A program made the translations under genes and the position numbers. Below the pieces are notes generated by a model that did not search any database, was not told where the DNA came from, and saw only the letters and a list, made by a program, of their open reading frames with translations. From Octopus bimaculoides (taxonomy: Eukaryota), in NCBI RefSeq assembly GCF_001194135.2, contig NC_068993.1, positions 52,612,259 through 52,676,258 on the forward strand: 64,000 bases of DNA. Reading direction: 5' to 3'. This document shows positions 6,253-32,625 of the stretch, in pieces; within the stretch, counting starts at the first letter, position 1; each line of letters begins with the position of its first letter.

Positions 6253-7055
6253 TAATAAATGTCACTCATATTTCCTTTCATCTTCTACTTCTTTCAGTCA
6301 TTTACTGTGAGAGTGCAAGGGCACTACCTTGACGAATTTTAGTCAAGCAAATTGACCCCATACTAATTTTTTGAAGCATAGTACTTATCTCATTGGTCTC
6401 TTTTGCCAAACTGCTAAGTTATGTGGATGTAAACACAGCAACACTGGTTGTCAAGTAGTCATAGGGAACAAACACAGACGCACAGATATACAATAGGTTT
6501 CTTTCAGCTTCTGTCATCCAGTTCCTCTTATAAGGCTTTGGTCAGCCTAAGGCTATAGTAGAAGACACTTGCCCAAGATGCCATGCAGTGGGACTGAAAC
6601 CAGAACCATGTGGTTGGGAATCAACCACATGATTCTGGGATGGAGTTTTTTTATTGAGGCAGATTTGTCTGGCCAGACACCCTTCCTGTTGCCAACCCTT
6701 ATGTTTCTGAGTAATAGATTAACTATTTAATCAATATACTAATCTGCATTTATCCTGATTAATCAACTGTGTTAGAAAAAGAGACGTAGATGGACAATGA
6801 TCATTCAAAATTGAGCAATTTTAAAATAATTAAAAGTAGAGACAAACATCATTATAAAATCTTTAATAAATTTGAATCCAAGATTATTTTTTATTTAAAA
6901 TTCATTTTCATTTATGTGAATTATTTTAAAAGTTTCACAGTAATAATTTCAATGATATAAGATAATAATTACTCTCATTTTGTTAAATAAAAACATGTCT
7001 TGTTCCTCCAAGAAAATTAAATTTATAGAACATTGTTGGCTAATACTTTAAATCA

Positions 7056-7061
7056 TTTATT
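7056..7061 (-). terminator. Candidate MTIF3 poly(A) signal AATAAA (second candidate at 6890-6895)
   Basis: TTTATT on + strand about 150 and 320 nt downstream of the stop. The AT-rich background makes this weak. Confidence 0.35.
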
Positions 7062-7212
7062 TCCATTTCTAATGTTAATGGAACCCTTCAATTCATTATG
7101 TTCATTTGCTTGGTTTGTTTTTGGTAATCATTTTTGTAATCATCAGCTTCAATTGGATGAGAACACAGCCATTGAAAGAGACAGCATCCACGGAAACAGA
7201 TGACAGGACAAA

Positions 7213-7344
7213 TTATGCTGTTTTTTTACGGAGAAGTACTATTATTTCTGTGGCTGTGCTACTGGCTTCCTTAATGTTGGCTATGGAACTGGTTTCTTCT
7301 GTTATCCGTTTCATAAACTTTAATTGAATTCTTCGGCTTTCAGT
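7213..7344 (-). CDS. MTIF3: MTIF3 exon 3 (TESRRIQLKFMKRITEETSSIANIKEASSTATEIIVLLRKKTA*)
   Basis: Phase-0 acceptor ttttcaatgcag|, 43 open codons to TAA, completing IF3-C. Confidence 0.8.
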   Translation of the reverse strand, partial: TESRRIQLKFMKRITEETSSIANIKEASSTATEIIVLLRKKTA

Positions 7345-7759
7345 CTGCATTGAAAATTAAAAAATAAAATAGGCATATCAGGAGTAATGTTGGCAAAATT
7401 CAGGAAGTATGGAATTTTCGAAGGATACAGTGTCATAGTGTCCTGACAACTAACAACTGTCATGGGTAATTTATTCCATGCATCAACAATTTTGAGGGTG
7501 AAATCAAAGTTTTAGAAAGTCATAGGTGCTGCATTGTTCTGTTAAACCAATCAATCAATGTCTCTGATTTATAGAGATGGAAATTGTTGAGCAGATTTGG
7601 ATACAAGTAACAATATTGTTGACTCATATATATATGTGTGTGTGTGTGTGTTTTAGTAAAATTTTTAAAATTAATCTAAACAAGAGAGAGTTAATATTCC
7701 ATTCAGTGAATTTTGGTCAACTTTGCTGCTTGATAAAAATAGCAATATCTCTAATCAGA

Positions 7760-7822
<63 letters not shown>

Positions 7823-10800
7823 TATATACTGTAAAAGCACCCACTACACTCTCGGATTGGTTGGCGTTAGGAAGGGCATCCAGCTGTAGAAACTCTGCCA
7901 AATCAGATTGGAGCCTGGTGTAACCACCTGGTTCACCAGTCCTCAGTCAAATCGTCCAACCCATGCTAGCATGGAAAGCGGACGTTAAACGATGATGATG
8001 ATGATGATTTTAGGACAGTTAACCCTTCGTGGGCCGGCAGAGTTGGAATTACACAAAAGGCCATTGGGATCCCGAGGGACCCACACTATCCATAAAGTAA
8101 CATTTGTTTAATCTTGTATATATGTGCGAGTGCATGATATAGAACAAGAAATTTAGCATCTTATAGGTTTATATTTGTAATTATTAGCATTTAATAGAGG
8201 GGAATTAAAATATAATTCATTGACTGAAAAAATCCTTTATCGAAAGAAATCAACAGTTTTTATAGTTTTATAAACTATACATATAGTACTAAATATAAAA
8301 TAAAACAAAATTATTTAGCATACTGATTCATACCAGTACAAATAGTTATAGTTCATCAGAATATTTGAAAAAAGAACAGAAAAAAAATAATTCCACAGAA
8401 GGCCGATGGGGTCCAGTTGGGCCGCATGGAAACTTTTAACTCAGTGGCTGTGTGGTAAGTAGCTTGCTTACCAACCACATGGTTCCGGGTTCAGTCCCAC
8501 TGCATGGCACCTTGGGCAAGTGTCTTCTACTATAGCCTCGGGCCGACCAAAGCCTTGTGAGTGGATTTGGTAGACGGAAACTGAAAGAAGCCCGTCGTAT
8601 ATATGTATATATATATATATGTGTGTGTGTGTTTATGTGTCCGTGTCTATATATATGTGGTGTGTTTACGTCCCCGTAACTTAGCGGTTCGGCAAAAGAG
8701 ACCGATAGAATAAGTACTAGGCTTCCAAAGAATAAGTCCTGGGGTCGATTTGCTCGACTAAAGGCGGTGCTCCAGCATGGCCGCAGTCAAATGACTGAAA
8801 CAAGTAAAGAGTATGTGCATACATAAACTATTGACAATAAAAGTCATGATATATAAAAATCATTTACATAAAGAATAGTAAAAATTGCATAACTTATAAA
8901 ATTTGCTGAAGTCCCATGGGACTCCACCGGCTCACGAAAGGTTAATGTTCGCATTGCGATTACTGTCTGTGTGTGAATGTGTAGTGATATTAGTACAGTG
9001 AAGCTTTGGTTTATGAATGCCTCTAATCACAGACAAGTCGGTACACGAAAACGTTTCTGGTGACGAACAGTGTCTCGAATAACGAACACGCAAGCTGGCA
9101 ATGATGGTTGATAAGCCGAGAGTATCAGCGAGGGCGCGTCAGTTGTTGTCTAGCTTTTGCTTAGTGAACGAATTCTCTTGAATTTCCTATGAGAAAAATG
9201 GTTTCGGTTTACGAATATTTCAAATGACATTTAATGAACGAATTAAATTCGTTCGTTAAATGTAATTTGAAATATTCGTAAACCGAGATTCCACTGAATA
9301 GTTAATGTTTTAATGTTAGTTATAAAATGGAAGGTTTAATTATTCGCAATGATTTCGCTATCATAAATAAATAATGACCATAGCGTTAAATCAGATGATT
9401 GAAAAAATACTAAGCGTTAACTAAAATTCTCTTTCTTTTTATTCAGCAAATAACCCTCCGGAGAATTAATCTGAACCGTATGGACTCTCCGTATAACCTT
9501 TAATTACAAATAATTGTATCCATTCTATTGTGTATAGAGTATTCAATTAAACAACGGTCTTTCTCATCGAATACTGGACATATTTTATTAATAACAATAG
9601 GCATTGACTAAGTAAGGGATACGACTCTGACGTTTCTAGAGTTATTTCCCTTTATATCTAAACTTTTTTTTTAAAAATCACTTTTACTTTGGTTATTTCT
9701 AATATTGAACATATTGGAAACAGTCAAACCTTTCAGTTACGTAACTTAAAAGTGAGTTTAGTACCAGAAATTCTTAATTAAATTATCAATTAGCATTTGT
9801 ATATATATTAGCAAATGTAGCGATATTAATGTGGCAAACAAGAGAAGTGAATTAGTAAGTGTAAGAGAGGAAAAGAGGCTGAGAGGGATGAAAGAGAAGG
9901 ATGGAAGGAATGTGTGCTTATATTTAATATCTTGAATATGTTGTGGAACCTCCACATAGCTAATTTAAAGCGATGAGCTGGCAAAATCTTTAGCAACATT
10001 TCAGCTGCTCTTTTGTTTTGAGATCAAATTCCACCAAGATCAACTTTGCCTTTCATCCTTTTGGGGTTGATAAAATAAGTACCAGCTGAGCACTGGCGTT
10101 GATGCAATCGACTTACCCCTAATATCTGGAATCGTTTGCCTTATGCCAAAATTTGAAATCCATATCTTAGATATATGTGGAGGCACATGGCCTAGTGCTT
10201 AGAGCAGTGGACTCGCGGTCGAAGGATCATGGATTTGAATCTCAGACTGGGCGATGTGTGTGTTTATGAGTGAAACACCTAAGCTCTACACACCTCCAGC
10301 AGAAGGTAATGGTGAACTTCTGCTGACTCTTTCATCACAACTTTTTCTCACTCTCTCCTCCTGCATCTAGCAGCACACCTGAGATGGACCAGCGTCTTGT
10401 CCAGGTGGGGAACCCATATGCCAATGAAACTGGGAAACCGGCCTTTATGAGCCAAGCATGGCTCAAGAAGGAACAAACATCTTAGATATATAGGTATAAT
10501 TAAACTAAAGACTAAAAAAATTATTAAAGGGAAAAGACAACCAGTTTCATTGTATTTTTTCTTAACATTTAGTAAAAATCTTTAGATTTATAAAATAACC
10601 CTTACCTCGTTATCACAATTTGACACTTTTATCTTCATTCTTATATTGATATTCTTCTCCAGTAACTCTTTCATTTTGTTTAACTTAACAAGAAAATCAT
10701 GTTCCGATATGGTACTTTTTATGTGAAGAGTTTTCTCTATAGCGGATTTTTCTTTTTTGAATTTTTTCAGAGTGAGCCGAGATTCAGTTAACTGTTTACC

Positions 10801-12450
10801 TGTCATCAATTGATAATGTGGTTCTAATTCGTCCTCATTTATTTGTACTAATTTGAGGTCCTTTAATTTTGCCAGCTTCTGAGCCTCATTTTTCTCAACA
10901 ACAGGTAACAGATGACCAGTCTCATCAAATAATTTAATCAACTTTGGTATTTCTTGTTCAGTGTTATCACCAACAGGTAGTTTACTAATAGCATTACTTT
11001 TCTTATATTTTGACTGCTTCCCAGTTGAAGCAAATCTCAGCTGAATGCTGACAGGAGCTGTGCAGGGTTTTAACTGTGATAGATGTAACAATGGACGATA
11101 CAGGGAAGAAAATCTGAAAAATAGAATATTAGCTTTCATAGACATATTACAACTATGATGATGTATAGAGGATATAGAGTAGTCTGCACTTTCCCTTTCA
11201 GCTTTCTGTACACTTCGTTTGAATTGGAGTTCAAGGAAGGGTATTACTTAAGTCTTGTCTTTCTGAAAGCAGATCATGAATTTCTGCTGATTTGTCTGAG
11301 AATCAGTCATTGGACTGACATGATTTAAATCCCACTGAAGAACTTGCAGCCTGATATACTTTTGTTTTGAAATCTTCCCATAGATTGTTTGGGTCAAGAT
11401 TGATACTTTCTATAGCATTGTGGAATCTTTGTATGTTGCTTGGTAATTTGAAGTTTGCAACATTTAACTTTTTGAGTACCTCAGAACCAGACTGCTGACT
11501 TTTAGGCATTATTGAAAAGTTTTATATTTCCATGCACTAGACAACGGTCAGTCCAGCTCCCTGCTCCTCTCATGGTCCGAACACTAGAAACATCTTTCAT
11601 ATCACGCTTTCTGATCAAAATATAATCTATGGGATGCCAGTCCTTAGATCTTGGGTGGTTTTATATTTATTTTTCTGTTTGAACAGAGTGTTGTTAACAA
11701 CCAGATTATTCTCAGTACATACATATATAAACATACCTATACACACACACGCATATATATGTGTGTATGTGCATGCAAAATATATTTGTATACATATGCG
11801 TACGTATTTACCACTTTTAGCATGTCAAATGATCACGCTTTCCTGAAGAGAACTAATAACATCGAAACCTGTCCATTGCTTTAAAGACGAGGACCGCTCT
11901 CTGTTTTAACTTTATTTCCGAAACACGTCAGCTAACTGATTTACAGGAAGTTATCTCGCTTATACATTGTTTTTAGATTTTAAAAATCACGGGGTAAGCT
12001 TTTATACATTAATGACATGGGTCATCTTCAGTTTCAAAAAAAATTTTTTTTTAAACATACAAAGAAGCGACAACAGATCCAAAGAGAACAAAGACAACAG
12101 AGGTCAACGGAGCCGCTGAGCTGAATGTCGTTAATGACAAGCGTAGATATACATCGTAAACACGTAATTGAACTGACTGGTAAAAACGAGAGCCGCTGTT
12201 ACTTATTTTACACAATAATAAATACAGACACTAACCAAAATAGCAGAAATTGCAAACATCAATAAATTTACTTAAGAAACAAAACTATAATGCTTTAAAA
12301 TTTAGTAATTTTTTTTAAAGAATAAAATATGTAGATGTACATGACTGAAATTAATGCTATCCTGACCGCATACAAATATCAGTGTCAATAGATCGTAAGA
12401 AAATATCATGCAACTTACATCCTTCGTTGACCAACGGCAATTGCAGCCAT
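7213..12450 (-). CDS. MTIF3: Mitochondrial translation initiation factor 3, 3 exons: complement(join(7213..7344,10606..11113,12419..12450)), 223 aa
   Basis: Exon 2 encodes IF3-N/IF3-C-like sequence (IKLFDETGHLL, LKLVQINE, KTLHIKSTISEHDFLVKLNKMKELLEK). All introns are GT-AG with matching phases. The N-terminus MAAIAVGQRRIFSSLYRPLLHLSQ resembles a mitochondrial presequence. Confidence 0.88.
7830..8007 (+). mobile_element. RTE-related 3' tail
   Basis: aaagcacccactacactc...cgttaaacgatgatgatg. Confidence 0.85.
8019..8945. mobile_element. piggyBac-like MITE with TTAA target sites, interrupted by a SINE
   Basis: ttaacccttcgtgggccggcagag at the left end; the right end reads ttaacctttcgtgagccggtggag on the minus strand. 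Confidence 0.72.
8444..8812 (+). mobile_element. SINE family A (tRNA-derived head, central TA/TG microsatellite)
   Basis: A box TGGCTGTGTGGTAAG, B box GGTTCAGTCCC, tail ggcggtgctccagcatggccgcagtcaaatgactgaaacaagtaaa. Confidence 0.85.
8994..9298. mobile_element. pogo/Tigger-like MITE with subterminal 83-bp palindrome (9204-9286)
   Basis: Termini tacagtgaagctttggtttatgaa / ttcgtaaaccgagattccactg. Palindrome arms are 41 bp with 2 mismatches. Confidence 0.62.
9972..10160 (+). mobile_element. SINE family B
   Basis: gagctggcaaaatctttagca...tttgcctttcatcctttt. Confidence 0.7.
10178..10478 (+). mobile_element. SINE family C (tRNA-like head)
   Basis: Diverged copy of 63455-63780: gtggaggcacatggcctagtg...gatggaccagcgtcttgtccag. 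Confidence 0.75.
10606..11113 (-). CDS. MTIF3: MTIF3 exon 2
   Basis: ORF 10588..11145 trimmed to acceptor ttctatttttcag| and donor GAG|gtaag. Confidence 0.9.
11190..11635 (-). mobile_element. RTE/BovB-like LINE fragment (end of endonuclease and linker) in MTIF3 intron 1
   Basis: IDYILIRKRDMKDVSSVRTMRGAGSWTDRCLV, then after a frameshift KKLNVANFK...LWEDFKTKVYQAA. Confidence 0.75.
12419..12450 (-). CDS. MTIF3: MTIF3 exon 1 (MAAIAVGQRR + AT, phase 2)
   Basis: ATG at 12450 followed by AT|gtaagt donor. The phase fits the ttttcag|A acceptor at 11113. Confidence 0.72.
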
Positions 12451-12734
12451 GCTATTTATTATTACACCGCTAACTATTTTTTTTTTTTTTTTACATGTTA
12501 ATGCAGAAAATGTTTTCTAAAAGTAGCATACTTTTATCTTTGAAATTTCCCAACTTTTGATTTAAAATAAAAAAGACACAAACGTATAATTTTAAAATAA
12601 AGAAAGTTCTTTTTTTAAAAAAATTAATACAAGATTCGTATTAACTAAAGCATTATATGAAAAAAAAATAACTCGGAAACAAAGTCTCGTTTGCGTGAGA
12701 GTTTAGTCCGTGATTTGTTGTGTGAAGCTTAATA
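12451..12734. promoter_or_regulatory. Bidirectional promoter/5' UTR region shared by MTIF3 and FIP1L1
   Basis: Only 284 bp separate the divergent ATGs. The segment has poly(dA:dT) tracts and local CpG retention. Confidence 0.7.
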
Positions 12735-12798
12735 ATGGATGCAACTGCGCCGCCAACAGTTGACGGAGTTGAAGACGACGATGCCTGGTTGTATGGAG
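12735..12798 (+). CDS. FIP1L1: FIP1L1 exon 1
   Basis: [21 protein letters not shown], donor G|gtagg. Confidence 0.9.
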
Positions 12799-15700
12799 GT
12801 AGGCTTACTCTTGTATTTTTGTTGCTGGAGATAGTTAAGTTCGTGTGTATTCATTATATCTATTCTTCGACATATTGGATGCTTTGCACCAGTCCGGTTC
12901 CGACCTCGACCCTATCAACTTTTCCCTTTTTCTGCTTTATCTGTATTTGCCTCCCTTATAAAATTCTGACTCTAAAAACACATCAAAATATGTCATTATT
13001 TTATTAAAAAAACCCTTTCATTGCTTACATTGTATGAAATAAGGAGTTGTAATTTTCATTCCTTTCTTTAATGGCGTTGGTAATTTGAAGGAAAACAAAT
13101 TATTTCAACTGGGGATTGAAACCAGATTGCATGCTCCGTTTGTCGAAAATTTACCCTCATTCTATGTTGCAAAATTAATTTTAATTTTTTAAACACATCT
13201 TTCAGTAATTTAAATCTAAATTCAAATCTATAAAATGTTTCAATTTTCTTTAAACAATTGTGGGTTTTTTTTACATTTGCAATTGTTTTTGAGTGAGGAT
13301 TCCATCAAATTTACTGATTATTGTGAAATGTGAGAGGTGTCCACTTTGTCACTTTCCTCTATAATTCTTTTCATGTCCATCTGGTTTTTTTTTCTTTTCT
13401 GTGAAACAATTTAATACCAAATATTATTGTAACTACTTATGGGATGTATGATATCTGTTGCATTAGCACTAAGTATTTGTTTACTTTCTCTCGAAGTGGA
13501 TAATTTCATTGAAATAAATTGCATGGTATTTTGTATGGCATATCTACACGTGTATTCCCGCGAGAAAGTTTCATTAAAAAAAAAATCCATTATTCTGTGC
13601 CAGTATGAAAAATGGATGTTAAATGATGATTTTATGTGTGTGTGTGTGTTCATGCTATATTATTAGCATTATCCTGCGTTTGAGAATAAATTATTACCTT
13701 ATCTGTATCTTTCAATACATCTCAACACTTCTAAAGCAAACTTTGTTGACTTTCAAGTTTAATTTATATATATATCTATATCAAGCAGTGTCATGTGCTT
13801 ACAGTCAACCACAAAAGCATGTCTGGATTATTTGACATTTTGCATAATCTTTATAAGCAAAACTTCATAACTATGTCCAGGCTGTTTTGTTGTTTGATAG
13901 ACTGTGAGATTACTAATTTGCTTGGATGCAAGTGTGGGTTAGCAACAGAAATAGGATCTGGTCATAGAAAAATCTGCCTTAACAATTTTGTCTGACCCAT
14001 GCAAGCATGGGCAAGTGAATCTTAGAATGATGATGATACAAAATAATTCATTTCAACTATTAGTTGATGTTGTATTTTATTTGTATCTTATAGTCATCTC
14101 TAAATTTATTGTTATTTTGATTTGTTCTTTTTTTTTTTTTTCTAGATTCTGAAAGTAAAGAAAATTCAGAACCTCCTCCAACTAGGTAAGTGTTTCCTTG
14201 AAATTGATTTTTAAGGCTTGCTCTGGTTATCTTAGAGCATTGATTTTCAACCAGGGTCCATATAAGATTTAGTTGTTAAAATTTATGTGCAATAAATTGA
14301 CTATGTATTTACAATACACTAAATATTTAATTATAAAAATATAAGAGGATTTTTTAAACATTGAATGGCTATGGGGGTCCACCTGAGTAAGATAGGGATC
14401 AAAGGGGCCCATGAGTAAATACTGGTTGAGAATCACTGCTTTAGAAGAAAACTTCAAACATTTGATGAACAAATTTTTAAGAACTGAAGTGGAATGACAT
14501 AGAGGCTGTTTGGCAGCCATGAATACTTGCACAAAAGCCGTGGTTGCTGACCACACATACCTTTGCTACATGCCATGGAGGCCATCATATGTCTCTGTGA
14601 CAGCCATAGATGTTGTCTGCTGCACATTCTTGATCGGTAATAGTGTGAACATGTGGTATATCAAAGATACTATATGAACATGCCTGTGTGATATATCATG
14701 GATACTGTCTACAGACTATGCCTTATGTCCTTAGTAAGATACGTAACTGTGAACCAAGCTGGAAAACCACAACCCTGATACACTATAAATTGTTCAGTTT
14801 TTAGAATAGATTCTACTTGAAACCTAATGTGTTTGAACAAATCTCCATCTCATGAAACAAATTGGATGTAGAACAAAAATTACTGATCAATTCTCATAAC
14901 CAAATTGAATTTTGTGTTTTTTTTTTTTCTTCGTTTGTTTGTCTGTAAACTTTTGAGAACAATTTCTGCAATAAATGTAACAAATATTTTTGTTTTATGT
15001 TTAGTGATGGCAGAAACGATGCTGATGAAAGCGTAAAATCTGAAGGCTCAGTAAAAGAAAGTAGTCCTCCATCGGCAACTAATGGATCTAGTCAGGCCAA
15101 ACCTAAAGACCCTGATGATAAGGAAGCGGGAGAATTGGTAAGTCTGGTCTCGCATTATAATTTCAATCACTGTGATCTGTGAAATATTTGTATTTCATTC
15201 AAATCGTGTAGTGCCCATTTGTCGAGCTTTTTTGATTTTCCAATTGCGTGCAAATGGTTGCAGGCAGTTTTCTAACTAACTTGAAGTTCTTTTGCCAGTT
15301 CTCAAGTGGTTTTACATGGATCTTTCTCACTGACAGTCTTTAATTGACCGTCATCGATGACAGTTGGACGTTCACTATGCTCATGATCTTCAAGGCTCAG
15401 GTCTCCACTGCGAAATCGTTTAAACCATTTTTGAGCTGACCACTCACTGGTCATTTCCTCATCAAATGTTTCGTTGATATCGTGAGCAGTTTCAGCTGCT
15501 TTATGTCCTTTTTTTAAAGTTGAATATCAAAATCGCTCGAATATCGTGCTTTGACAGTCCCATTTCAGATTATTGTAACAATGGTGAAAAATATATCAAT
15601 GTTGATTTATTGATGCATTTGGGCAAGTCCATGTCTGTATTATCAGACAATTGAAAAAGAAATGTTTAAAATAAATTCAAAACTCTGCAAAAATCCCATA

Positions 15701-24700: not shown

Positions 24701-27700
24701 TAACATTTCTGCCAGCTCACTGCCTTATGATTAAGTGATTGAAAAATTAACATAGCTATTACCATATTGGGCAGTTACTATATTAATAGCAATTACCATT
24801 CTCGGCACTCATGTTAATAAATGAGTTAGAGAAAATAAAGCAGCTAGCATATGCCCCTTTGATACCTTCTTTACATAATATTCTATTGATGTTTGCTTAT
24901 CTTTTACAGGTATGCCTCCACCTCCAGGAGTTGCAATGATCCCCCCAGCTTTCCCAGTACCCCCACCTACAACTGATGGCTATGATTGTAAGTATTACAC
25001 AAACTACGTGTTTCTAATATGTCTTTAACTTTATATACTGGGTTGTTGTTTCTCTAGATTAACTTTTGTCTTTAAAACCTTATAAAATTCTTGAAATGGA
25101 AGAGCAATTCATATCACATCTTATATTAATTCACATCCAGAATTGAGTCTTAGTTCTGTGTAATATTCAAAACCTTGTTCGAGGTTCCACCATTTGGTGC
25201 TCTCTCACTCTTTAAATCTTTCGAACAGCTTACAGTTACTGAAAATGTTTATTTTCAGCTGTCTCATTTTCCAACAGGGTAATTGAGTTGGCAGAATTGT
25301 TAGAGCATCACACAGAATGCCTTTCATTAATTTACATTCTGAGTTCAAATCTGATTGAAGTCAAGAAGTCTATTATGCTTTATCTCCTTCCCGTATTGAT
25401 AAAGTACCATTCAAGTACTCAGGTCAATTGTAATCAATTAATCCCCTCTCCTTCAATTTACTGGCCTTGTGTCTAAATTAGAAATCATTAGTAAATTTTT
25501 CAACAGAGTGGTAGATTGACAAAGTCCCTTTTTTTTTTATTTCTTGTGGCTCTTTACATTCTGAGTTCAAATCCCACTGAGGTTCATCCTTCCAGGGTTG
25601 ATAAAGTACCATTGAAATACTGTTGTTGAAGGTAATGACTAAGCCCCCCCCCCTCCCACTCAGTTTGCTTGATCCTCTCAAGTTAGAAATCATTATTAAC
25701 TTCTACCAACAATCTGATGGGTTGGCAGAATCAGTTGAGCATCTGACAAAAGGCCTTTCATTATTTCTTTTGGCTCTTTGTTGTAGGAGTTCAAAGTCAG
25801 CTGAGGTCAACTTTGCCTTTGCCTTTCATCCTTCTGGGGCTTTTATAAAATCAAGTATCAGTCACTTATTTTTTTTTCCAAATTTTTTTTGAATCCTAAG
25901 ACTTGAAAGGCCAGTTAACTGTTTTTTTGTTTTTTTTGGCCTATAAGTGACTGAGACTACAATGTTTCCCTTGAATGAGATGCCAGCCCTTTCCAAGGTT
26001 CAAGGTCAACAGTTTTCAGGGGAGAGGGCAAGTCAATTACATCAACCCCAGCACTTGACTGGTACTTTATTAACCCTGAAGGGATAAAAGGCAAAGTTGA
26101 CCTTGGTGTGATTTGAACTCAGAAGAAATGCTACTATGCATTTTATCTGACGTACTAACAATTCTGCCAGCTTGCTACCTTATCAGTCAACTACTAGGAT
26201 TAAAATAATCCACTTTACTCCTTCCCTAAATTTCAGGCCTTACGCATGTGTTAGTAATTATTATTTACTCTTTCCATTAAGAGAGATGTAATGGAGTAGA
26301 GATAAACTGCTAATTGTTAGTTGGTAACCTTGTATGAGTTTCCATTTACGTCACAAATAGCTTTTATAGAAGGCTTGAATGTCTTGGAAGTCTCTGGCTT
26401 TGTACATATGCAAGAGATCTTTTATTTCTCTTTTTGTTTTTAAAATAGCTGTTGGTATATGTAATCGTGCTACAATTGTTCACATGTTAATTCCAACTTA
26501 CCAATGGCTGATGCTACCTGTTGTTATGTTCTTATTGCAGAAATAACATCAGACTTGAAGTGGTGTTTTAAGTTACTGAAATACATTAAATTCTTTGATT
26601 TCTCTCTGATTCTTTTTGTTATTTTTAAAGAATTATACTGTTTGAAATATTTCTTTTTTTTTTTCTCTCTTTTCAGCTTATTATCAGCCACAGAACCAAC
26701 CATCTGATCGGTAAATATTACTTTTTATTATAATTTGTTTGAATATTTTCAGTGCCATACATTACAATGTAAACTGTAAACTATGTAATCAATTAAAAAA
26801 AAAAAGTGGGGGGCCTTGATGCAAGCGAGGTAGTGTGGTTGAGAAGGTTGCTTCCCAACCTTGTGGTATTAGGATCAGTGCCCCAGCACAGCACCTTGGG
26901 TGGTTGTGTTCTACCATAACCCTTGGCTAACCAAAGTAACGCTAGTATCTGATTAGCCACTGTTTTTTCTATATATCGAGACAGAAGTTTGGCTAGCATA
27001 TGGTGGTAGTGCATACCTGTTGCTGATGAAATGCAAGCATGCAGAAATCACTTGATCTAGCAATTTTTGCCCACTATTGATATTTCTGTGCTTTTTAGCA
27101 CTATACATCTGCATGAGATACTTTCTCGAGATGGATACTGCAGTATTATATTTTAAGTATATATATATATTAAGAAGGATATGTAGATTGCTATCATCAT
27201 CGTTTAACGTCCGCCTTCCATGCTAGCATGGGTTGGACGATTTGACTGAGGACTGGTGAAACCAGATGGCTACACCAGGCTCCAATCTGATTTGGCAGAC
27301 TTTCTACAGCTGGATGCCCTTCCTAAANNNNNNNNNNNNNNNNNNNNNNNNNNNNNNNNNNNNNNNNNNNNNNNNNNNNNNNNNNNNNNNNNNNNNNNNN
27401 NNNNNNNNNNNNNNNNNNNNNNNNNNNNNNNNNNNNNNNNNNNNNNNNNNNNNNNNNNNNNNNNNNNNNNNNNNNNNNNNNNNNNNNNNNNNNNNNNNNN
27501 NNNNNNNNNNNNNNGCTATCATCATCGTTTAACGTCCGCCTTCCATGCTAGCATGGGTTGGACGATTTGACTGAGGACTGGTGAAACCAGATGGCTACAC
27601 CAGGCTCCAATCTGATTTGGCAGACTTTCTACAGCTGGATGCCCTTCCTAAAGCCAACCACTCACAGAGTGTAGTGGGTGCTTTTACATGTCACCTGCAT

Positions 27701-30700
27701 TGTCACTAATATCACTTCTATCTCTAATAACTAATAAAATGGTCAGATATTGTTAGTATTCATAAGGCAACAAGCTGGCAGAATTGTTAGAATGTCAGAA
27801 ATATTGCTTAGTGACATTTCTTCTGGCTCTATTCATACTGAGTTCAAATCCTGCTGGGGTCTACTTTGTCTTTCACCTTTTACAATCAACTTACACTCAC
27901 CTCAGAGTTTCTAGCCTTGTGCCAAAAACATTAGAATTATTATTATACTTGTTATTCATATTCAACCAAGGTTGACTTTGCCTTTCATCCTTTCAGAGTT
28001 GATGAAATAAATAGCAGTCAAATACTGTGGTTGATGTGACCAATTAACCCCCTCTCACGAAATTTCAAGCCTTGTGCTTATATTCTAAAGGATTATTATA
28101 CTTGTTATTATGTTGAACTCTCCCAAGGTGGCGAGCTGGCAGAATTGTTAGCTCATTGGACAAAACGCTTAGCAGTATTTTGCCCATCACTACATTCTAA
28201 GTTCAAATTCCACCGATGTCGACTTTGCCTTTCATCCTTTCAGGGTCAATAAGTTAAGCATCAGTGAAACAAACACTGGGGTTGATATAATTGACTAGTC
28301 CCCACCCTCACAGATTTGAGGCTTTGTGCTTCCAGTAGAAATGATTGTTGACCTCTCCAGTTGCCACATTTTATCCAATTATTTTTTTACACGACATTTA
28401 TTGCAGCAATTCTAGCTATGAGGAACGACAATCCTACAACTACGATAACAACCATCCATATTCCAATACATATTCAAACCCACCTCCACACTGGGAGAAC
28501 AGGTATTGTGCTTAATTTATCATTGTATTCTGAATAGGTTAAGATTGTAATTAATGACAGGAATTTTAAGAGATTGTTGTTTCCATGCCCCTTTTTTTCT
28601 GTAAATGTAGTGGAACTCTGCTTCAAATTTTATTTGTGTTTATCTCTGCACTGCTACAACAGTTTAATATTGATTGGGGAGCAGTTACATTTTGCTTAGG
28701 CTACTTCCATAAGCTATAGCTGTCTGTCACTTGCAAGTGAATCTAACCTGATAAGATAAGCATGGACCATCATCATCATCATCGTTTAACGTCCACTTTC
28801 CATGCTAGCATGGGTTGGACGATTTGACTGAAGACTGGTGCAACCGGATGGCTACACCAGGCTCCAATCTAATTTGGCAGAGTTTCTACAGCTGGATGCC
28901 CTTCCTAACGCCAACCACTCAGAGAGTGTAGTGGGTGCTTTTACGTGTCACCTGCATGAAAACGGCCACGCTCGAAATGGTGTCTTTTATGTGCCACCCG
29001 NNNNNNNNNNNNNNNNNNNNNNNNNNNNNNNNNNNNNNNNNNNNNNNNNNNNNNNNNNNNNNNNNNNNNNNNNNNNNNNNNNNNNNNNNNNNNNNNNNNN
29101 NNNNNNNNNNNNNNNNNNNNNNNNNNNNNNNNNNNNNNNNNNNNNNNNNNNNNNNNNNNNNNNNNNNNNNNNNNNNNNNNNNNNNNNNNNNNNNNNNNNN
29201 NNNNNNNNNNNNNNNNNNNNNNNNNNNNNNNNNNNNNNNNNNNNNNNNNNNNNNNNNNNNNNNNNNNNNNNNNNNNNNNNNNNNNNNNNNNNNNNNNNNN
29301 NNNNNNNNNNNNNNNNNNNNNNNNNNNNNNNNNNNNNNNNNNNNNNNNNNNNNNNNNNNNNNNNNNNNNNNNNNNNNNNNNNNNNNNNNNNNNNNNNNNN
29401 NNNNNNNNNNNNNNNNNNNNNNNNNNNNNNNNNNNNNNNNNNNNNNNNNNNNNNNNNNNNNNNNNNNNNNNNNNNNNNNNNNNNNNNNNNNGGTATGCAC
29501 ACTGACATTACACATCCAGCGGAGCATACTGGCTTCATTCCTTGCGAGCTTACGCATGTCCTCAGCAGTCACAGCCCATGTTTCACTGCCATGTAGCATG
29601 GCTGTTCGTACGCATGCGTCATACAGTCTGCCTTTTACCCTGAGTGAGAGTCCCTTTGTCGCCAGCAGAGGTAAGAGCTCTCTAAACTTGGCCCAGACTA
29701 TTCTTATTCTAGCAGTCACACTTTCAGCGCACCCACCCCGACTACTAACTTGGTCACTTGCTTTAGTTGTGTGTATGTGGTCATGAGCAGACACAGGCAG
29801 TGTCTCAACCTTCCTTAACTTCACCTAGCAGAACATCAGTGCTGTGACAGTTGGAAGGACAAAGTTTCACCAGCAGTTGACTGAACAGGAGAAACATGAA
29901 ATGAAGCGCCTTGCTGAAAGACGCAACACACTGCCCAGTCCAGGAATTGAACACAGGGCCTAATGATTGTAAGCCCAACACCCTGAGCATTAGGTCGTGT
30001 GCTATTGTGACTACGTATTAAATATTTTATTCTTTTTCTGAAAGTCATCTTGTCTCGGCTATCTTTCCTTTCCTGGGACAGATGCATTTTGTCAAACTCA
30101 TTTTAAGTATTATTGTCATGTAGGGTTAAATATCATGGTTGATGTAGAATATCTCTCTTGGAATGTGAAGTGGAAAAGATGTCCTGGTTGTTTTTCCTGG
30201 AACTTAACCTAATTTAACCACATCATGTGCTGGCCACTTGTTTAATATTAAGACATCTGAGTGGGACCTTATATAATTTCAGTGGTCACTCACTCTGCTA
30301 AAAGTAGCAGCTAAATCACTCCCTACTGTTTTCTAGATGGAATGGACACATTACATAATGTGTCCAGTCCATGTCTGACCCAAGTTAAACAATATAATAT
30401 CAGTATTAACTTGCTCAGATGTTGGCCCGCCTGTGTCTAACTTTACTCTTGCTTGGGAGCTCAAGAATAATGATTGAAGGCAAACTAATGGACAGAATCA
30501 GCTGCATTTTTTTCTCTGTATTTTGTTTATCATTGCTTTACCGAAAATCTGGCAGAGATGACTTTTAACCGATTCCCTCTTGAAATGTATCATTTCTACT
30601 TTGCCATATTTCTTCAGTTTCATTTGCTTGTCTCAAAATGACAATAATAATAATGTCTGATTTGTCACTCTACAGGCATCCCACAAGTCAGTCCACTCAC

Positions 30701-32625
30701 AGGTTTGTTTATTCTTTATATCCTAGACAGACTGGCTGAGGGTTTTCTAAAGTAAAGCAAAAAAACTTAAGCATTAATAATGGTCATTTCAGAATATATA
30801 AACTTCTACCTAGCTTATATTATGCATGTTCAAAGTTGCAGTGGTTTGGCTTTTAAAAAAAAAAAAAAAAAAAAAAAAACGCTAGTGTNNNNNNNNNNTA
30901 GTGTAGTCCTAGCCTGCTTCTCCTGCCCCCTTTTTTGTGTGCCCTCTTATTTTCACTGCTGCTTTTTTTTCCAACTTTACCCACTTGGAGATTTAAAAGG
31001 AGTAAGTTTTCAACCCCCTTTTACTCTTTAAGAAAAAAAAAAAAAGCTTCAATTTTCAAAATTCTTAAGCCAACAGCACCAAAAATGATGCTTCAGAACC
31101 TTCCTTGTAGAGCATATTCTTTTAGATAGGTAAGGGATCTATCTGGATTAAGCCTAATGCATCCTTTACCTAACAGATAAGAATTAGCAAAAGGAAAAGC
31201 GTCCAACATTAAAACACTGTCCCAATAATATCTAACCCATGCTGGCATGGAAAAACAACCATAAAAACAAATGAATGTAATGACATTCCTCTGCAACTTA
31301 AATGATATAACTGCTCTTTATCACCATTTAATGACATAATTTAAGCTATCCTATATTTCAAAATAAAATAGTAATGTCCATCTTAAACCATGCCAGCATA
31401 GTTATAAATACAATCAAAACAACAATTCAGTAAGCGATAATGGTAAAAAGTTCTTTTGTAAAGTAGCATTCTTTAAAGGTCTGTTAGCCTTCTGTGAATG
31501 TAAACTATGAACTTGTTTCACCCAAACGTAATTTAACTTGTTCACAAAATAGAATTTTTAAAAAAGTTGGTACTGTGCAGTGTTGTTTTCACTATGCTCA
31601 AATTCCTAGCCCTCCCTCTCAGTTATTCTAACATTGTAAAAACTGCTCTAACAAATTAATGTGTTTCATTTTCAATAATCTTCTTTTCTTGTAATTAGAA
31701 GCAACAACTTTGAGAGGTGGGACTATAACAGAGACCGTAGCCCTCAACGAGAATCTGATTACAACAGGTGACATTTGTACTTTATTCTGAAAATTTGCTT
31801 GAACATTTTAAGAAAAAAATTTTAGTTTAGAATGCAAAAATCCTATTTTATTCCACCAATAAACGCCCAACATGTAGAATTTGGAGTTTTTATTTATAAA
31901 AATAGTCAGATTAGAAATGAAATTGGCAGTTTGAAAAGAAAGTTTTAATAGTGTTTTTTTTTATGACTGACTTCCCTCGTGAGACCTTAAGATTTACTAA
32001 ATATTTAATTAGGTCTGCAGATTTTAATTGTATATTTTATGAACATTGTGCTAGTTTTATAATAAAAAGCAACTTTAGGAGAATATTAAGTCCAAATTAA
32101 ATTTAGTATAAGGGAAAAAAAAACTTGAAGGCTTAATTTTATTGTTTGTACAACTTTTCACAAAATAATTTTAAATATAGGTTTCTTTTCTTGTGATAAA
32201 ACTTCGCTATATATTTAATTTGATATTTATTTCTGTTATTATGAGGAGTGGGTACCGCCGTGACCGTGAAAGAGAACGGGATCGTGAGAGAGACAGGTCT
32301 TGGTCAAGAGATCGTGAACGCACTCGAGAACACAGACATAGAGACAGAGAAGACAGGCACCGTTCACGCAGGTAAGGAATACTTGTGATGACTGGTCTTT
32401 TAAAGTTTACTGCTAAAATTCTCGTTTGTCTCTTAAATTTTAATTGCCAAAAAACATTGTCTTTCTTGTTGCTGTAGGAAACATCGGGATGAAGAAGAGA
32501 CAAATGAACATCACCGTTCTAAACACAAGAAAGCAAAGAAGTCAAAACGAGAAAAAGAAGAGGAGGGTAATGATAGCTCAGGCTTAGCTGTAGGAGGAAA
32601 TGTCCCTCCTGAAGATGTTCCTTGA
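12735..32625 (+). CDS. FIP1L1: Pre-mRNA 3'-end-processing factor FIP1, 17 exons: 12735-12798, 14146-14185, 15005-15137, 16035-16141, 17844-17893, 18065-18196, 20201-20310, 21628-21703, 22521-22689, 23571-23692, 24910-24987, 26677-26710, 28407-28502, 30676-30702, 31699-31767, 32246-32371, 32478-32625 (1581 nt, 526 aa)
   Basis: N-terminal EDDDAWLYG; acidic [18 protein letters not shown]; Fip1 motif [36 protein letters not shown]; TIDVIG; Pro-rich region; RD/RE/RS repeats; [10 protein letters not shown] tail. All phases are consistent. Confidence 0.95.
14146..14185 (+). CDS. FIP1L1: FIP1L1 exon 2
   Basis: Poly-T tctag acceptor, [13 protein letters not shown], donor AG|gtaagt. Confidence 0.8.
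14238..14438. mobile_element. hAT-like MITE
   Basis: TIRs cattgattttcaaccag / ctggttgagaatcactg, with degenerate 8-bp flanks tcttagag / ctttagaa. Confidence 0.6.
15005..15137 (+). CDS. FIP1L1: FIP1L1 exon 3
   Basis: [10 protein letters not shown]...EAGEL, donor TTG|gtaagt. Confidence 0.85.
15185..15750 (-). mobile_element. Mariner transposon 5' part (TIR and HTH region, disrupted)
   Basis: [31 protein letters not shown]...[23 protein letters not shown]. Hsmar-like TIR tatcaggtttagtaaaaagtaagcaacg. Confidence 0.85.
16035..16141 (+). CDS. FIP1L1: FIP1L1 exon 4
   Basis: [35 protein letters not shown]. Confidence 0.92.
16375..16895 (+). mobile_element. RTE-related 3' UTR with (GAT)n tail
   Basis: Repeated ggtggcacgt motifs leading into the common tail. 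Confidence 0.8.
16896..17122. mobile_element. piggyBac-like MITE (~225 bp)
   Basis: cctttagcatt...cactaaaaggttaa; homologous to 18206-18436. Confidence 0.65.
17844..17893 (+). CDS. FIP1L1: FIP1L1 exon 5
   Basis: ttccag| [16 protein letters not shown] |gtaat; phases 2 and 1 fit the neighbouring exons. Confidence 0.8.
18065..18196 (+). CDS. FIP1L1: FIP1L1 exon 6
   Basis: [33 protein letters not shown]. Confidence 0.95.
18206..18436. mobile_element. piggyBac-like MITE (~225 bp)
   Basis: TTAA|CCCTTTAG...CTAAAGGG|TTAG. Confidence 0.7.
18700..19025 (+). mobile_element. SINE family D (degenerate tRNA head, gttcactcagctgtag core)
   Basis: catggctcagaggttagagcatc head; cttgagcaagac and ccagttcactcagctg motifs. 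Confidence 0.55.
19335..19575 (+). mobile_element. RTE ORF C-terminus and tail fragment
   Basis: [29 protein letters not shown] followed by ggcgttaggaaaggcatcc. Confidence 0.7.
20201..20310 (+). CDS. FIP1L1: FIP1L1 exon 7 (Fip1 motif)
   Basis: [37 protein letters not shown]. Confidence 0.96.
21628..21703 (+). CDS. FIP1L1: FIP1L1 exon 8
   Basis: tttcag| [25 protein letters not shown] |gtaag. Confidence 0.8.
22521..22689 (+). CDS. FIP1L1: FIP1L1 exon 9
   Basis: [29 protein letters not shown]..., donor TA|gtgagt. Confidence 0.87.
23571..23692 (+). CDS. FIP1L1: FIP1L1 exon 10
   Basis: [40 protein letters not shown]. Confidence 0.87.
23983..24385 (+). mobile_element. SINE family A (spans a small N gap)
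   Basis: tggctgtgtggttaagaagtttgct head; gaatgaaacaagtaaaggataaaaga tail. Confidence 0.75.
24910..24987 (+). CDS. FIP1L1: FIP1L1 exon 11
   Basis: ttttacag| [26 protein letters not shown] |gtaagt. Confidence 0.85.
26677..26710 (+). CDS. FIP1L1: FIP1L1 exon 12
   Basis: Long polypyrimidine tract + cag, [11 protein letters not shown], donor CG|gtaaat. Confidence 0.78.
27190..27700 (-). mobile_element. RTE-related tail, duplicated across an N gap (probable assembly overlap)
   Basis: 27190-27327 is identical to the start of the post-gap contig at 27515. Confidence 0.75.
28407..28502 (+). CDS. FIP1L1: FIP1L1 exon 13
   Basis: [31 protein letters not shown], donor AG|gtattg. Confidence 0.82.
28768..29775 (-). 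mobile_element. 5'-truncated RTE LINE spanning an N gap
   Basis: [27 protein letters not shown]...[22 protein letters not shown]...MLRWMC, with the 3' UTR and (GAT)n tail at 28768. Confidence 0.88.
30676..30702 (+). CDS. FIP1L1: FIP1L1 candidate 27-nt microexon 14
   Basis: ctctacag| (R)HPTSQSTH |gtttgt; frame-preserving, phase 2-2. Confidence 0.5.
31699..31767 (+). CDS. FIP1L1: FIP1L1 exon 15
   Basis: [22 protein letters not shown]; TAGAAG tandem acceptor. Confidence 0.85.
32246..32371 (+). CDS. FIP1L1: FIP1L1 exon 16 (RD/RE/RS-rich)
   Basis: [41 protein letters not shown], donor AG|gtaagg. The acceptor must be GAG. Confidence 0.85.
32478..32625 (+). CDS. FIP1L1: FIP1L1 last coding exon
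   Basis: [30 protein letters not shown]...EDVP*. Confidence 0.9.

What the first reader, a model, noticed from the sequence alone, without database searches (positions are those of the whole stretch)
7213..32625. MTIF3-FIP1L1 pair may be a relic of the ancestral ParaHox neighbourhood
Seen: MTIF3 and FIP1L1 are immediate head-to-head neighbours. Established: human MTIF3 lies beside LNX2 at 13q12 (MTIF3-LNX2-POLR1D-GSX1-PDX1-CDX2), and human FIP1L1 lies beside LNX1 at 4q12 (FIP1L1-LNX1-CHIC2-GSX2-PDGFRA). These are two paralogous ParaHox regions. Inference: the two genes were adjacent in the bilaterian ancestor, were separated in vertebrates by reciprocal loss after genome duplication, and the pair survived in a lineage known for heavy genome rearrangement.
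Basis: partly seen in the sequence, partly recalled or inferred. Interest (0 to 1): 0.72.

Follow-up and report, generated by a model that had tools for sequence, protein, structure and literature searches.

The report
Ancient MTIF3–FIP1L1 head-to-head gene pair
In this octopus sequence the genes for a mitochondrial translation factor (MTIF3) and an mRNA 3'-end processing factor (FIP1L1) start 284 bases apart on opposite strands; abalone, oyster, an annelid and amphioxus have the same pairing, so it predates the split of these animal groups, and vertebrates most likely separated the two genes by losing opposite copies after genome duplication.

Summary
MTIF3 (minus strand, 3 exons, 7213-12450, 223 aa) and FIP1L1 (plus strand, 15 coding exons, 12735-32625, 505 aa) are head-to-head, with 284 bp between their start codons. 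All four assembly gaps lie in FIP1L1 introns, and no exon is missing.

The pair is not specific to octopus. An IF3-type gene sits head-to-head with Fip1, 91-1039 bp away, in Octopus vulgaris, Haliotis rubra, Ostrea edulis, Owenia fusiformis (the weakest case) and Branchiostoma belcheri. In amphioxus a TFIIIA-type gene also lies beside MTIF3, as GTF3A does at human 13q12. The pair is absent in an ant (Neugrin instead) and was not detected in a coral. In a bird, FIP1L1 is followed by a RING+PDZ gene (LNX1) and no IF3 gene is nearby.

The ParaHox link outside vertebrates is not shown. The window holds no LNX, CHIC, SCFD2 or homeobox gene. The downstream neighbour is an INF2-like formin, and the outer neighbours differ in every spiralian checked.

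This is a new member of a known kind (a conserved bidirectional pair with reciprocal ohnologue loss). Interest is moderate.

The parts
7213..7344 (-). MTIF3 exon 3 (last 43 codons plus TAA; the stop codon ends at 7213)
   Evidence: tblastn to O. vulgaris IF-3 P0002 residues 180-222 at 91% identity. AG acceptor read. Spliced ORF verified.
10606..11113 (-). MTIF3 exon 2 (most of the protein: IF3 N-domain and the start of the C-domain)
   Evidence: Pfam IF3_N 33.9 bits. 88% identity to P0002. AG/GT junctions read.
12419..12450 (-). MTIF3 exon 1 (MAAIAVGQRR-, start codon at 12450-12448)
   Evidence: Matches the O. vulgaris N-terminus MAAIAVGQRRI. GTAAGT donor.
12451..12734 (.). Intergenic region of 284 bp between the two start codons; presumed shared bidirectional promoter
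   Evidence: 24% G+C, 7 CpG. About 89% identical to the O. vulgaris counterpart across 12400-12840, which also includes both first exons. Promoter activity is inferred, not tested.
12735..12802 (+). FIP1L1 exon 1 ([22 protein letters not shown]-)
   Evidence: WLYG(G) motif shared with Lingula, Haliotis, Ostrea, amphioxus and human FIP1. Only a GC donor at 12803 keeps the frame. The sequence is identical in O. vulgaris.
15005..15137 (+). FIP1L1 exon 2 (acidic/Ser-rich, ends ...DDKEAGEL)
   Evidence: 'KEAGEL|SGEE' is conserved in other invertebrate FIP1 proteins. 4 of the 5 substitutions I read in the alignment against O. vulgaris are synonymous in this frame.
16035..16141 (+). FIP1L1 exon 3 (…[14 protein letters not shown]…)
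   Evidence: tblastn to P0126; junctions.
17844..17893 (+). FIP1L1 exon 4 ([16 protein letters not shown])
   Evidence: tblastn to P0126 at 94% identity; junctions.
18065..18196 (+). FIP1L1 exon 5 (first part of the Fip1 motif)
20201..20310 (+). FIP1L1 exon 6 (core of the Fip1 motif: [16 protein letters not shown]…)
   Evidence: Pfam Fip1 63.7 bits alone and 85.6 bits spliced to exon 5. 97% identity to P0126.
21628..21703 (+). FIP1L1 exon 7
22521..22689 (+). FIP1L1 exon 8 (…[19 protein letters not shown]…)
23571..23692 (+). FIP1L1 exon 9 (Pro-rich)
24194..24213 (.). Assembly gap 1, in the intron between exons 9 and 10
   Evidence: It lies inside one copy of repeat family A (24092-24171 and 24328-24375, same orientation and order).
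24910..24987 (+). FIP1L1 exon 10 (Pro-rich, ends …DGYD)
26677..26710 (+). FIP1L1 exon 11, a 34-nt micro-exon ([12 protein letters not shown])
   Evidence: Found by a motif search. It restores the reading phase between exons 10 and 12 and matches P0126 residues 288-298.
27328..27514 (.). Assembly gap 2, in the intron between exons 11 and 12
   Evidence: Flanked on both sides by copies of repeat family B.
28407..28502 (+). FIP1L1 exon 12
29001..29491 (.). Assembly gap 3, in the intron between exons 12 and 13
   Evidence: A family B repeat copy ends 57 bp before it.
30889..30898 (.). Assembly gap 4, in the same intron (exons 12-13)
   Evidence: It follows a run of A (a run of lysine codons just before the X's in the ORF listing).
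31699..31767 (+). FIP1L1 exon 13
32246..32371 (+). FIP1L1 exon 14 (Arg/Asp/Glu-rich)
   Evidence: ORF; frame and junctions.
32478..32625 (+). FIP1L1 exon 15 (Lys-rich C-terminus; the stop codon ends at 32625)
   Evidence: ORF. Resembles the amphioxus C-terminal exon. Frame verified.

Best explanation
MTIF3 and FIP1L1 form an ancient divergent (head-to-head) gene pair that was already present in the last common ancestor of protostomes and deuterostomes.

The two start codons are only 284 bp apart here, and the called genes are 91-1039 bp apart in the other species. Both genes are therefore most likely driven from one short shared bidirectional promoter region. A breakpoint between them would probably damage at least one promoter, which would explain why the pair survived even in the heavily rearranged octopus genome. 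This promoter mechanism is inferred, not shown.

In the chordate ancestor the local order was GTF3A(+), MTIF3(-), FIP1L1(+). LNX probably followed further on in (-) orientation. After the two vertebrate genome duplications each gene could be lost from a different copy without touching a promoter in use. One paralogon kept GTF3A-MTIF3-LNX2 (human 13q12, beside GSX1-PDX1-CDX2). Another kept FIP1L1-LNX1 (human 4q12, beside CHIC2-GSX2).

Shown here: the gene models, the adjacency in six assemblies, the TFIIIA neighbour in amphioxus, and the FIP1L1-LNX1 arrangement without IF3 in a bird. Inferred: promoter sharing, selection against separation, and reciprocal loss as the way the pair was split.
For: - Gene models and the 284-bp spacing.
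- O. vulgaris chromosome OX597826.1: Fip1 gene and IF3_N gene head-to-head, 294 bp apart. The window is collinear with it at 84-93% DNA identity.
- Haliotis rubra: a gene with Pfam IF3_N and IF3_C, head-to-head with Fip1, 215 bp apart. It scores 107.7 bits against my animal-MTIF3 HMM.
- Ostrea edulis: a 215-aa gene head-to-head with Fip1, 332 bp apart. It scores E=1.4e-15 against the MTIF3 HMM; tblastn hits.
- Owenia fusiformis: a 224-aa gene head-to-head with Fip1, 1039 bp apart. Only the C-terminal domain matches, E=3.7e-8.
- Branchiostoma belcheri: TFIIIA-type zinc-finger gene (+), IF3 gene (-), Fip1 gene (+), with 91 bp between the last two. Pfam IF3_C E=2.5e-8 and IF3_N E=7e-6.
- Bird: FIP1L1(+), then a convergent RING plus multi-PDZ gene 1.6 kb downstream, and no IF3 signal in 57 kb.
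- Literature: LNX1, CHIC2 and GSX2 lie between FIP1L1 and PDGFRA in human (PMC8588648). MTIF3, LNX2, POLR1D, GTF3A, USP12, RPL21 and GSX1 fall in one 0.5-Mb cattle interval, with PDX1 and CDX2 nearby (PMC8520274). 13q12 and 4q12 are ParaHox paralogy regions made by two genome duplications (PMC2944030).
- Own knowledge, not tested here: the human strands are GTF3A(+), MTIF3(-), LNX2(-) and SCFD2(-), FIP1L1(+), LNX1(-). These are exactly what deletion of FIP1L1, or of GTF3A and MTIF3, from the amphioxus-like order would leave. RASL11A/RASL11B and USP12/USP46 bracket the interval on the other side.
Against: - The pair is not universal. In the ant Atta colombica, Fip1 is head-to-head with Neugrin and no IF3 gene lies within 10 kb. 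In the coral Acropora digitifera the upstream gene shows no IF3 similarity.
- The Owenia match covers only the C-terminal domain, and Pfam itself does not recognise the oyster or Owenia products.
- No promoter, transcription start site or co-expression data were available, so the constraint mechanism is inference. The intergenic DNA is not more conserved between the two octopuses than nearby introns.
- LNX is not adjacent to FIP1 in any invertebrate locus fetched. In amphioxus no PDZ or RING ORF stood out in a by-eye reading of the 5 kb downstream of FIP1.
- Only ±10 kb around each gene could be seen. Linkage to ParaHox genes was not testable.
Confidence: 0.8

Rival explanations
1. The pair is ancient, but vertebrates separated it by an ordinary rearrangement (translocation or inversion) unrelated to genome duplication. 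On this view the position of each gene beside an LNX paralogue is coincidental.
For: No vertebrate with both genes together on one paralogon was found: the lamprey and fish look-ups failed. Ohnologue status of LNX1/LNX2 was not tested here.
Against: MTIF3 and FIP1L1 occupy equivalent positions next to LNX2 and LNX1, in regions accepted as paralogous (PMC2944030). GTF3A-MTIF3 adjacency is shared by amphioxus and mammals. From my own knowledge of the human map, the orientations fit simple deletion from the amphioxus-like order, and a translocation would need two independent coincidences.
Confidence: 0.1
2. The pair is an ancient neighbourhood kept by chance (slow neutral decay of gene order), with no functional constraint from a shared promoter.
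For: The intergenic DNA is not unusually conserved between the two octopus species. The pair has been broken in an ant. No expression data are at hand.
Against: All outer neighbours have changed in octopus, oyster, abalone and Owenia, while this one junction survives with a gap of at most about 1 kb. Survival in octopus, where gene order is known to be heavily scrambled (own knowledge), is hard to explain without some constraint.
Confidence: 0.08
3. The adjacency arose independently in molluscs, annelids and amphioxus, or is an artefact of assembly or annotation.
For: None beyond the weak Owenia match and the lack of Pfam hits for the oyster and Owenia gene products.
Against: Same two genes, same divergent orientation and a sub-kilobase gap in six independent assemblies (and the window). 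The junction region of the window has no gap and aligns base for base with a gap-free stretch of an O. vulgaris chromosome.
Confidence: 0.02

Closest known systems
Human/mammalian 13q12.2 segment USP12-RPL21-RASL11A-GTF3A-MTIF3-LNX2-POLR1D-GSX1-PDX1-CDX2 (the ParaHox cluster region)
   Same: It holds MTIF3, with GTF3A beside it as in amphioxus.
   Different: It has no FIP1L1, and MTIF3's upstream neighbour is LNX2. In the octopus window there is no GTF3A-like zinc-finger gene in the 7 kb beyond MTIF3 and no ParaHox gene.
Human/bird 4q12-type segment SCFD2-FIP1L1-LNX1-CHIC2-GSX2-PDGFRA (a ParaHox paralogy region)
   Same: It holds FIP1L1, whose 3' end faces LNX1 (bird; human gene content).
   Different: It has no MTIF3, and the head-to-head partner of FIP1L1 is a different gene (SCFD2 from my own knowledge; shown here only to be non-IF3). 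In octopus the gene facing FIP1L1's 3' end is an INF2-like formin, not LNX.
Conserved bidirectional (head-to-head) gene pairs and ancient metazoan microsynteny blocks (e.g. Irimia et al. 2012 Genome Res; Simakov et al. 2013 Nature; cited from own knowledge)
   Same: Two unrelated housekeeping-type genes in divergent orientation, less than 1 kb apart, kept together across phyla while the surrounding order decays.
   Different: I found no paper whose main text names this pair in that context; supplementary tables were not searched. The pair is absent from vertebrates, so screens anchored on human would miss it.
Amphioxus CHIC-SYCP1 putative bidirectional promoter beside the ParaHox cluster (PMC5803294)
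   Same: A proposed shared bidirectional promoter involving a ParaHox-neighbour gene in an invertebrate chordate.
   Different: That pair is recent, formed by a retrogene insertion within amphioxus. The MTIF3-FIP1L1 pair is ancient and found across phyla.

Membership tests
Mitochondrial translation initiation factor 3 (bacterial-type IF3 family) | IF3 N-terminal domain | tested here: met
   Pfam IF3_N 33.6 bits against a cut-off of 26.9.
Mitochondrial translation initiation factor 3 (bacterial-type IF3 family) | IF3 C-terminal domain | tested here: inconclusive
   Pfam IF3_C 24.6 bits, E=2.4e-5, below the 34.8 cut-off. NCBIfam infC 47.7 bits over profile positions 15-159 of 170, below its cut-off of 60. 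A custom animal-MTIF3 HMM covers both domains at 134 bits.
Mitochondrial translation initiation factor 3 (bacterial-type IF3 family) | Closest named relatives are MTIF3 | tested here: met
   90% identity to O. vulgaris 'translation initiation factor IF-3' and 57% to Argonauta 'IF-3, mitochondrial-like'.
Mitochondrial translation initiation factor 3 (bacterial-type IF3 family) | N-terminal mitochondrial targeting peptide | not tested
   The first 28 residues are basic with no acidic residue, which fits a presequence, but no predictor was run.
FIP1 / FIP1L1 (pre-mRNA 3'-end processing factor) | Fip1 motif | tested here: met
   Pfam PF05182 81.9 bits against a cut-off of 22.7, residues 147-191.
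FIP1 / FIP1L1 (pre-mRNA 3'-end processing factor) | Acidic N-terminus with a WLYG(G) motif, and an Arg/Asp/Glu-rich C-terminus | tested here: met
   Compared with the Lingula, Haliotis, Ostrea, Argopecten, amphioxus and Owenia proteins and with the full model.
FIP1 / FIP1L1 (pre-mRNA 3'-end processing factor) | One uninterrupted reading frame across all exons | tested here: met
   A 505-aa ORF from 15 exons. It requires a non-canonical GC donor after exon 1; the GT two codons earlier breaks the frame.
Conserved bidirectional gene pair | Divergent orientation with start sites less than 1 kb apart | tested here: met
   284 bp between start codons. Gaps between called genes are 91-332 bp in four other species and 1039 bp in Owenia.
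Conserved bidirectional gene pair | The same pair in distant lineages | tested here: met
   Mollusca (3 classes), Annelida (weaker) and Cephalochordata. Absent in an ant and undetected in a coral.
Conserved bidirectional gene pair | Shared promoter activity or co-expression | not testable with these tools
   No transcript start or expression data are available.
ParaHox neighbourhood (paralogon) genes | Vertebrate orthologues lie beside ParaHox loci | tested here: met
   Literature. Bird FIP1L1-LNX1.
ParaHox neighbourhood (paralogon) genes | Linkage to LNX, CHIC, SCFD2 or Gsx/Xlox/Cdx in this genome | tested here: not met
   Within the 64-kb window the only other gene is an INF2-like formin, and no C2H2 zinc-finger motif was found outside FIP1L1. 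No LNX, CHIC, SCFD2 or homeobox ORF stood out in a by-eye reading of the ORF lists; no targeted scan was run. Beyond the window this could not be tested.
ParaHox neighbourhood (paralogon) genes | Linkage of the pair to the ParaHox cluster in an unduplicated chordate or another invertebrate | not testable with these tools
   Only ±10 kb around each gene could be fetched. In amphioxus CHIC-SYCP1-Gsx is known (PMC5803294), but its position relative to FIP1 is unknown to me.
Reciprocal ohnologue loss after the vertebrate genome duplications | An unduplicated outgroup has both genes together | tested here: met
   Amphioxus L001.
Reciprocal ohnologue loss after the vertebrate genome duplications | Each survivor sits at the equivalent position between retained ohnologue pairs | tested here: inconclusive
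   LNX1 next to FIP1L1 was shown in a bird. MTIF3 with LNX2 and GTF3A comes from the literature. Strand orientations and the RASL11A/B and USP12/46 brackets come from my own knowledge. No gene trees were made.

The most novel reading that the evidence does not exclude
The bilaterian ancestor already carried GTF3A-MTIF3-FIP1L1(-LNX-CHIC) next to its ParaHox cluster, and the MTIF3-FIP1L1 pair is held together by selection on a shared promoter. If so, the octopus pair marks the 'ghost' of the ancestral ParaHox locus in a genome where the cluster has dispersed. It would also mean that whole-genome duplication was the only route by which vertebrates could split the pair.
Probability: 0.25. Interest if true: 0.55.

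Novelty: new member of a known kind. Interest (0 to 1): 0.42.

Why it matters
- It adds three ordered, oriented markers (GTF3A, MTIF3, FIP1L1) to the reconstruction of the chromosome segment that carried the ParaHox cluster before the vertebrate genome duplications.
- It gives a clean example of duplication allowing a tightly coupled bidirectional pair to be split by reciprocal loss.
- It provides a small, easily scored anchor for asking where the ancestral ParaHox region went in cephalopods.
- It is a neat detail rather than a surprise. Conserved head-to-head pairs and reciprocal ohnologue loss are both well-known phenomena.

Tried and rejected
- Look-ups that failed because only the longest product of a gene is on record: Argopecten, Lingula, Lampetra and a teleost. 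So there are no scallop, brachiopod, cyclostome or fish data.
- A short Fip1-motif query returned only short fragments, apparently because of a length filter, and cost one of the three protein searches.
- Pfam alone did not recognise the oyster or Owenia neighbour gene. I therefore built an animal-MTIF3 HMM from 153 representatives. It confirmed oyster strongly, Owenia for the C-terminal domain only, and found nothing in Acropora.
- The canonical GT donor after FIP1L1 exon 1 was rejected because it gives 13 in-frame stops. Assembly error was rejected as the cause because O. vulgaris has the same bases.
- I considered that the formin downstream might be a Diaphanous orthologue, since the DIAPH genes lie on ParaHox-paralogon chromosomes. 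It was rejected because its FH2 domain is closest to INF2.
- I looked for a GTF3A-like zinc-finger gene beyond MTIF3 in the window and in O. vulgaris. None was found, and the O. vulgaris neighbour looks like a transposon-derived ORF (my reading, not searched).
- Rfam and tRNA scans of the window found nothing.
- Literature searches for the two genes together, or either with ParaHox or microsynteny, found no relevant paper.

Full report
**What the window is.** It is AT-rich animal DNA (about 35% G+C) with eight runs of N. The MTIF3 product is 90% identical to the Octopus vulgaris protein. The DNA is collinear with O. vulgaris chromosome record OX597826.1 at 84-93% identity. The source is therefore an octopus other than O. 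vulgaris.

**MTIF3.** It lies on the minus strand in three exons (12450-12419, 11113-10606, 7344-7213) with canonical GT-AG junctions, and gives a 223-aa product.
- Pfam IF3_N scores 33.6 bits, above its cut-off.
- Pfam IF3_C scores 24.6 bits, below its cut-off.
- NCBIfam infC aligns over nearly its whole length, E=1.4e-12.
- An HMM I built from 153 animal MTIF3-like representatives scores 134 bits.
- No assembly gap touches this gene.

**FIP1L1.** It lies on the plus strand from the ATG at 12735 to the stop ending at 32625. I placed 15 coding exons using a cephalopod FIP1 protein (P0126) and the splice signals.
- A 34-nt micro-exon at 26677-26710, too short for tblastn, was found by a motif search. 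It restores the reading phase between its neighbours.
- The spliced frame is open for 505 aa, and the Fip1 motif scores 81.9 bits.
- One junction is odd. After exon 1, only a GC donor (AG|GCTTAC at 12803) keeps the frame; the GT four bases upstream (12799) gives 13 stops. O. vulgaris has the same bases at both ends of this intron. Of the five substitutions I read in exon 2 of the alignment, four are synonymous in the coding frame. So this is not an assembly error.

**The gaps, tested first.** All four gaps in the finding's span fall in introns: between exons 9 and 10, between 11 and 12, and two between 12 and 13.
- Every residue of P0126 is accounted for outside the gaps, in order and on one strand. 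The scaffold joins are therefore consistent with one continuous gene, and no coding sequence is hidden.
- Gap 1 lies inside a single copy of a roughly 370-bp interspersed repeat.
- Gap 2 is flanked by two copies of a roughly 175-bp repeat, and gap 3 follows another copy of that repeat. This explains why the assembler broke there.

**The observation.** The two start codons face away from each other across 284 bp of 24% G+C DNA. The finding's coordinates are exactly the two stop codons.

**Is the pairing special to octopus?** No. I used invertebrate FIP1 proteins found to fetch their loci with 10-kb flanks.

| Species | What lies head-to-head with Fip1 | Gap between called genes | Evidence that the neighbour is IF3 |
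|---|---|---|---|
| O. vulgaris | IF3_N gene | 294 bp | Pfam IF3_N |
| Haliotis rubra (abalone) | gene with IF3_N and IF3_C | 215 bp | Pfam; HMM 107.7 bits |
| Ostrea edulis (oyster) | 215-aa gene | 332 bp | HMM E=1.4e-15 |
| Owenia fusiformis (annelid) | 224-aa gene | 1039 bp | C-terminal domain only, E=3.7e-8 |
| Branchiostoma belcheri (amphioxus) | IF3 gene | 91 bp | Pfam IF3_C E=2.5e-8; HMM 104.5 bits |

- In amphioxus a TFIIIA-type zinc-finger gene lies on the far side of the IF3 gene, convergent with it.
- In the ant Atta colombica the head-to-head partner of Fip1 is Neugrin, and no IF3 gene lies within 10 kb.
- In the coral Acropora digitifera the upstream gene shows no IF3 similarity.

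By parsimony the pair existed in the protostome-deuterostome ancestor. It has been lost in at least one insect lineage, and its presence before bilaterians is open.

**Vertebrates.**
- In a bird (Lamprotornis), FIP1L1(+) is followed 1.6 kb downstream by a convergent RING plus multi-PDZ gene, which is LNX1. There is no IF3 signal anywhere in the 57-kb locus.
- The bird's upstream neighbour was not identified by Pfam. From the human map I expect it to be SCFD2.
- Published data place LNX1, CHIC2 and GSX2 between FIP1L1 and PDGFRA in human (PMC8588648).
- MTIF3, LNX2, POLR1D, GTF3A, USP12, RPL21 and GSX1 fall in one 0.5-Mb cattle interval, with PDX1 and CDX2 close by (PMC8520274).
- 13q12 and 4q12 are accepted ParaHox paralogy regions produced by two genome duplications (PMC2944030).
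- From my own knowledge of the human map, the strands are GTF3A(+), MTIF3(-), LNX2(-) and SCFD2(-), FIP1L1(+), LNX1(-). Deleting FIP1L1, or GTF3A and MTIF3, from an amphioxus-like GTF3A(+) MTIF3(-) FIP1L1(+) ... LNX(-) order gives exactly these two arrangements. RASL11A/RASL11B and USP12/USP46 bracket the interval on the other side.
- Reciprocal loss of ohnologues is therefore the simplest account.

**How it most likely works.** Two broadly needed genes share a very short divergent intergenic region, so almost any breakpoint between them would disrupt a promoter. That would hold the pair together while everything around it is reshuffled. The outer neighbours do differ in octopus (INF2-like formin), oyster, abalone and Owenia. 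Genome duplication removes the constraint because each gene can be lost from a different copy. This mechanism is inferred. I had no transcription start site or expression data, and the intergenic DNA is not more conserved between the two octopuses than nearby introns.

**What is not shown.** Nothing links the pair to ParaHox genes outside vertebrates.
- Apart from the two genes and repeats, the window holds only an INF2-like formin gene running from about 35.3 kb to the end of the window on the minus strand.
- No LNX, CHIC, SCFD2 or homeobox ORF stood out in a by-eye reading of the ORF lists, no Pfam hit pointed to one, and no zinc-finger gene was found. No targeted PDZ, RING or homeobox scan was run.
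- In amphioxus, no PDZ or RING ORF stood out in the 5 kb beyond FIP1 (read by eye).
- The tools gave only ±10 kb per locus, so chromosome-level linkage could not be tested.
- "Relic of the ParaHox neighbourhood" is thus justified at the level of the chordate ancestor, from vertebrate paralogy plus the amphioxus trio. It remains open for the bilaterian ancestor and for octopus.

**Novelty and verdict.** No paper in the searchable library names MTIF3 and FIP1L1 together in a synteny context, or either of them with ParaHox beyond a passing mention of fip1l1 as a zebrafish ParaHox-region marker. Supplementary tables of microsynteny screens were not searched. The phenomenon belongs to two well-known kinds: conserved bidirectional pairs and reciprocal ohnologue loss. 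I class it as a new member of a known kind. The core inference carries a confidence of about 0.8, the ParaHox extension is untested, and interest is moderate (0.42).

Noticed in passing
window 12798-12808 and 15000-15010: The first FIP1L1 intron seems to be a GC-AG intron with a weak donor (AG|GCTTAC). The nearby GT donor breaks the frame. O. vulgaris has the same bases at both ends of the intron, so this is not an assembly error; an undetected micro-exon is the alternative.
   Followed up: partly
window 26677-26710: A 34-nt FIP1L1 micro-exon ([12 protein letters not shown]) that tblastn missed. It is needed to keep the reading phase between the flanking exons.
   Followed up: yes
window 8443-8813 (seed) and 10 further places; 7831-8005 (seed) and 9 further places: Two interspersed, SINE-like repeat families of about 370 bp and about 175 bp, also present many times in the O. 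vulgaris locus. Copies flank or contain three of the four assembly gaps in FIP1L1, which explains those gaps.
   Followed up: partly
window about 35277-64000, minus strand: An INF2-like (inverted formin) gene convergent with FIP1L1. It has FH2 exons, a 2.4-kb exon (46892-49294) with long poly-proline FH1 runs and a long Ser/Thr/Glu-rich stretch, and a Drf_FH3 exon at the window's end. The gene runs off the window.
   Followed up: partly
window 45281-46683, plus strand: Three long ORFs (130-178 aa) in an intron of the formin gene. The two scanned (45281-45742 and 46214-46603) have no Pfam hit. I suspect the remnant of a transposable-element protein.
   Followed up: no
L007 (Atta colombica KQ976662.1) 6333-12225: In the ant, Fip1 is head-to-head with Neugrin, and MRPL52 is next to that. 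MTIF3 has been replaced as neighbour by two other genes of the mitochondrial translation apparatus. This may be coincidence or a hint of shared regulation.
   Followed up: no
L003 (Owenia fusiformis) 7310-8961: The Owenia gene next to Fip1 matches only the C-terminal domain of MTIF3. Its N-terminal 110 residues show no IF3 N-domain similarity. Either the domain has been lost or has diverged, or the gene model is incomplete.
   Followed up: partly
L006 (O. vulgaris OX597826.1) 27031-27498: The gene called beyond MTIF3 in O. vulgaris looks to me like a fragment of a helicase-type transposon protein, not GTF3A. This reading is by eye only; no search was run. The GTF3A-MTIF3 adjacency seen in amphioxus and mammals was not found in octopus.
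   Followed up: partly
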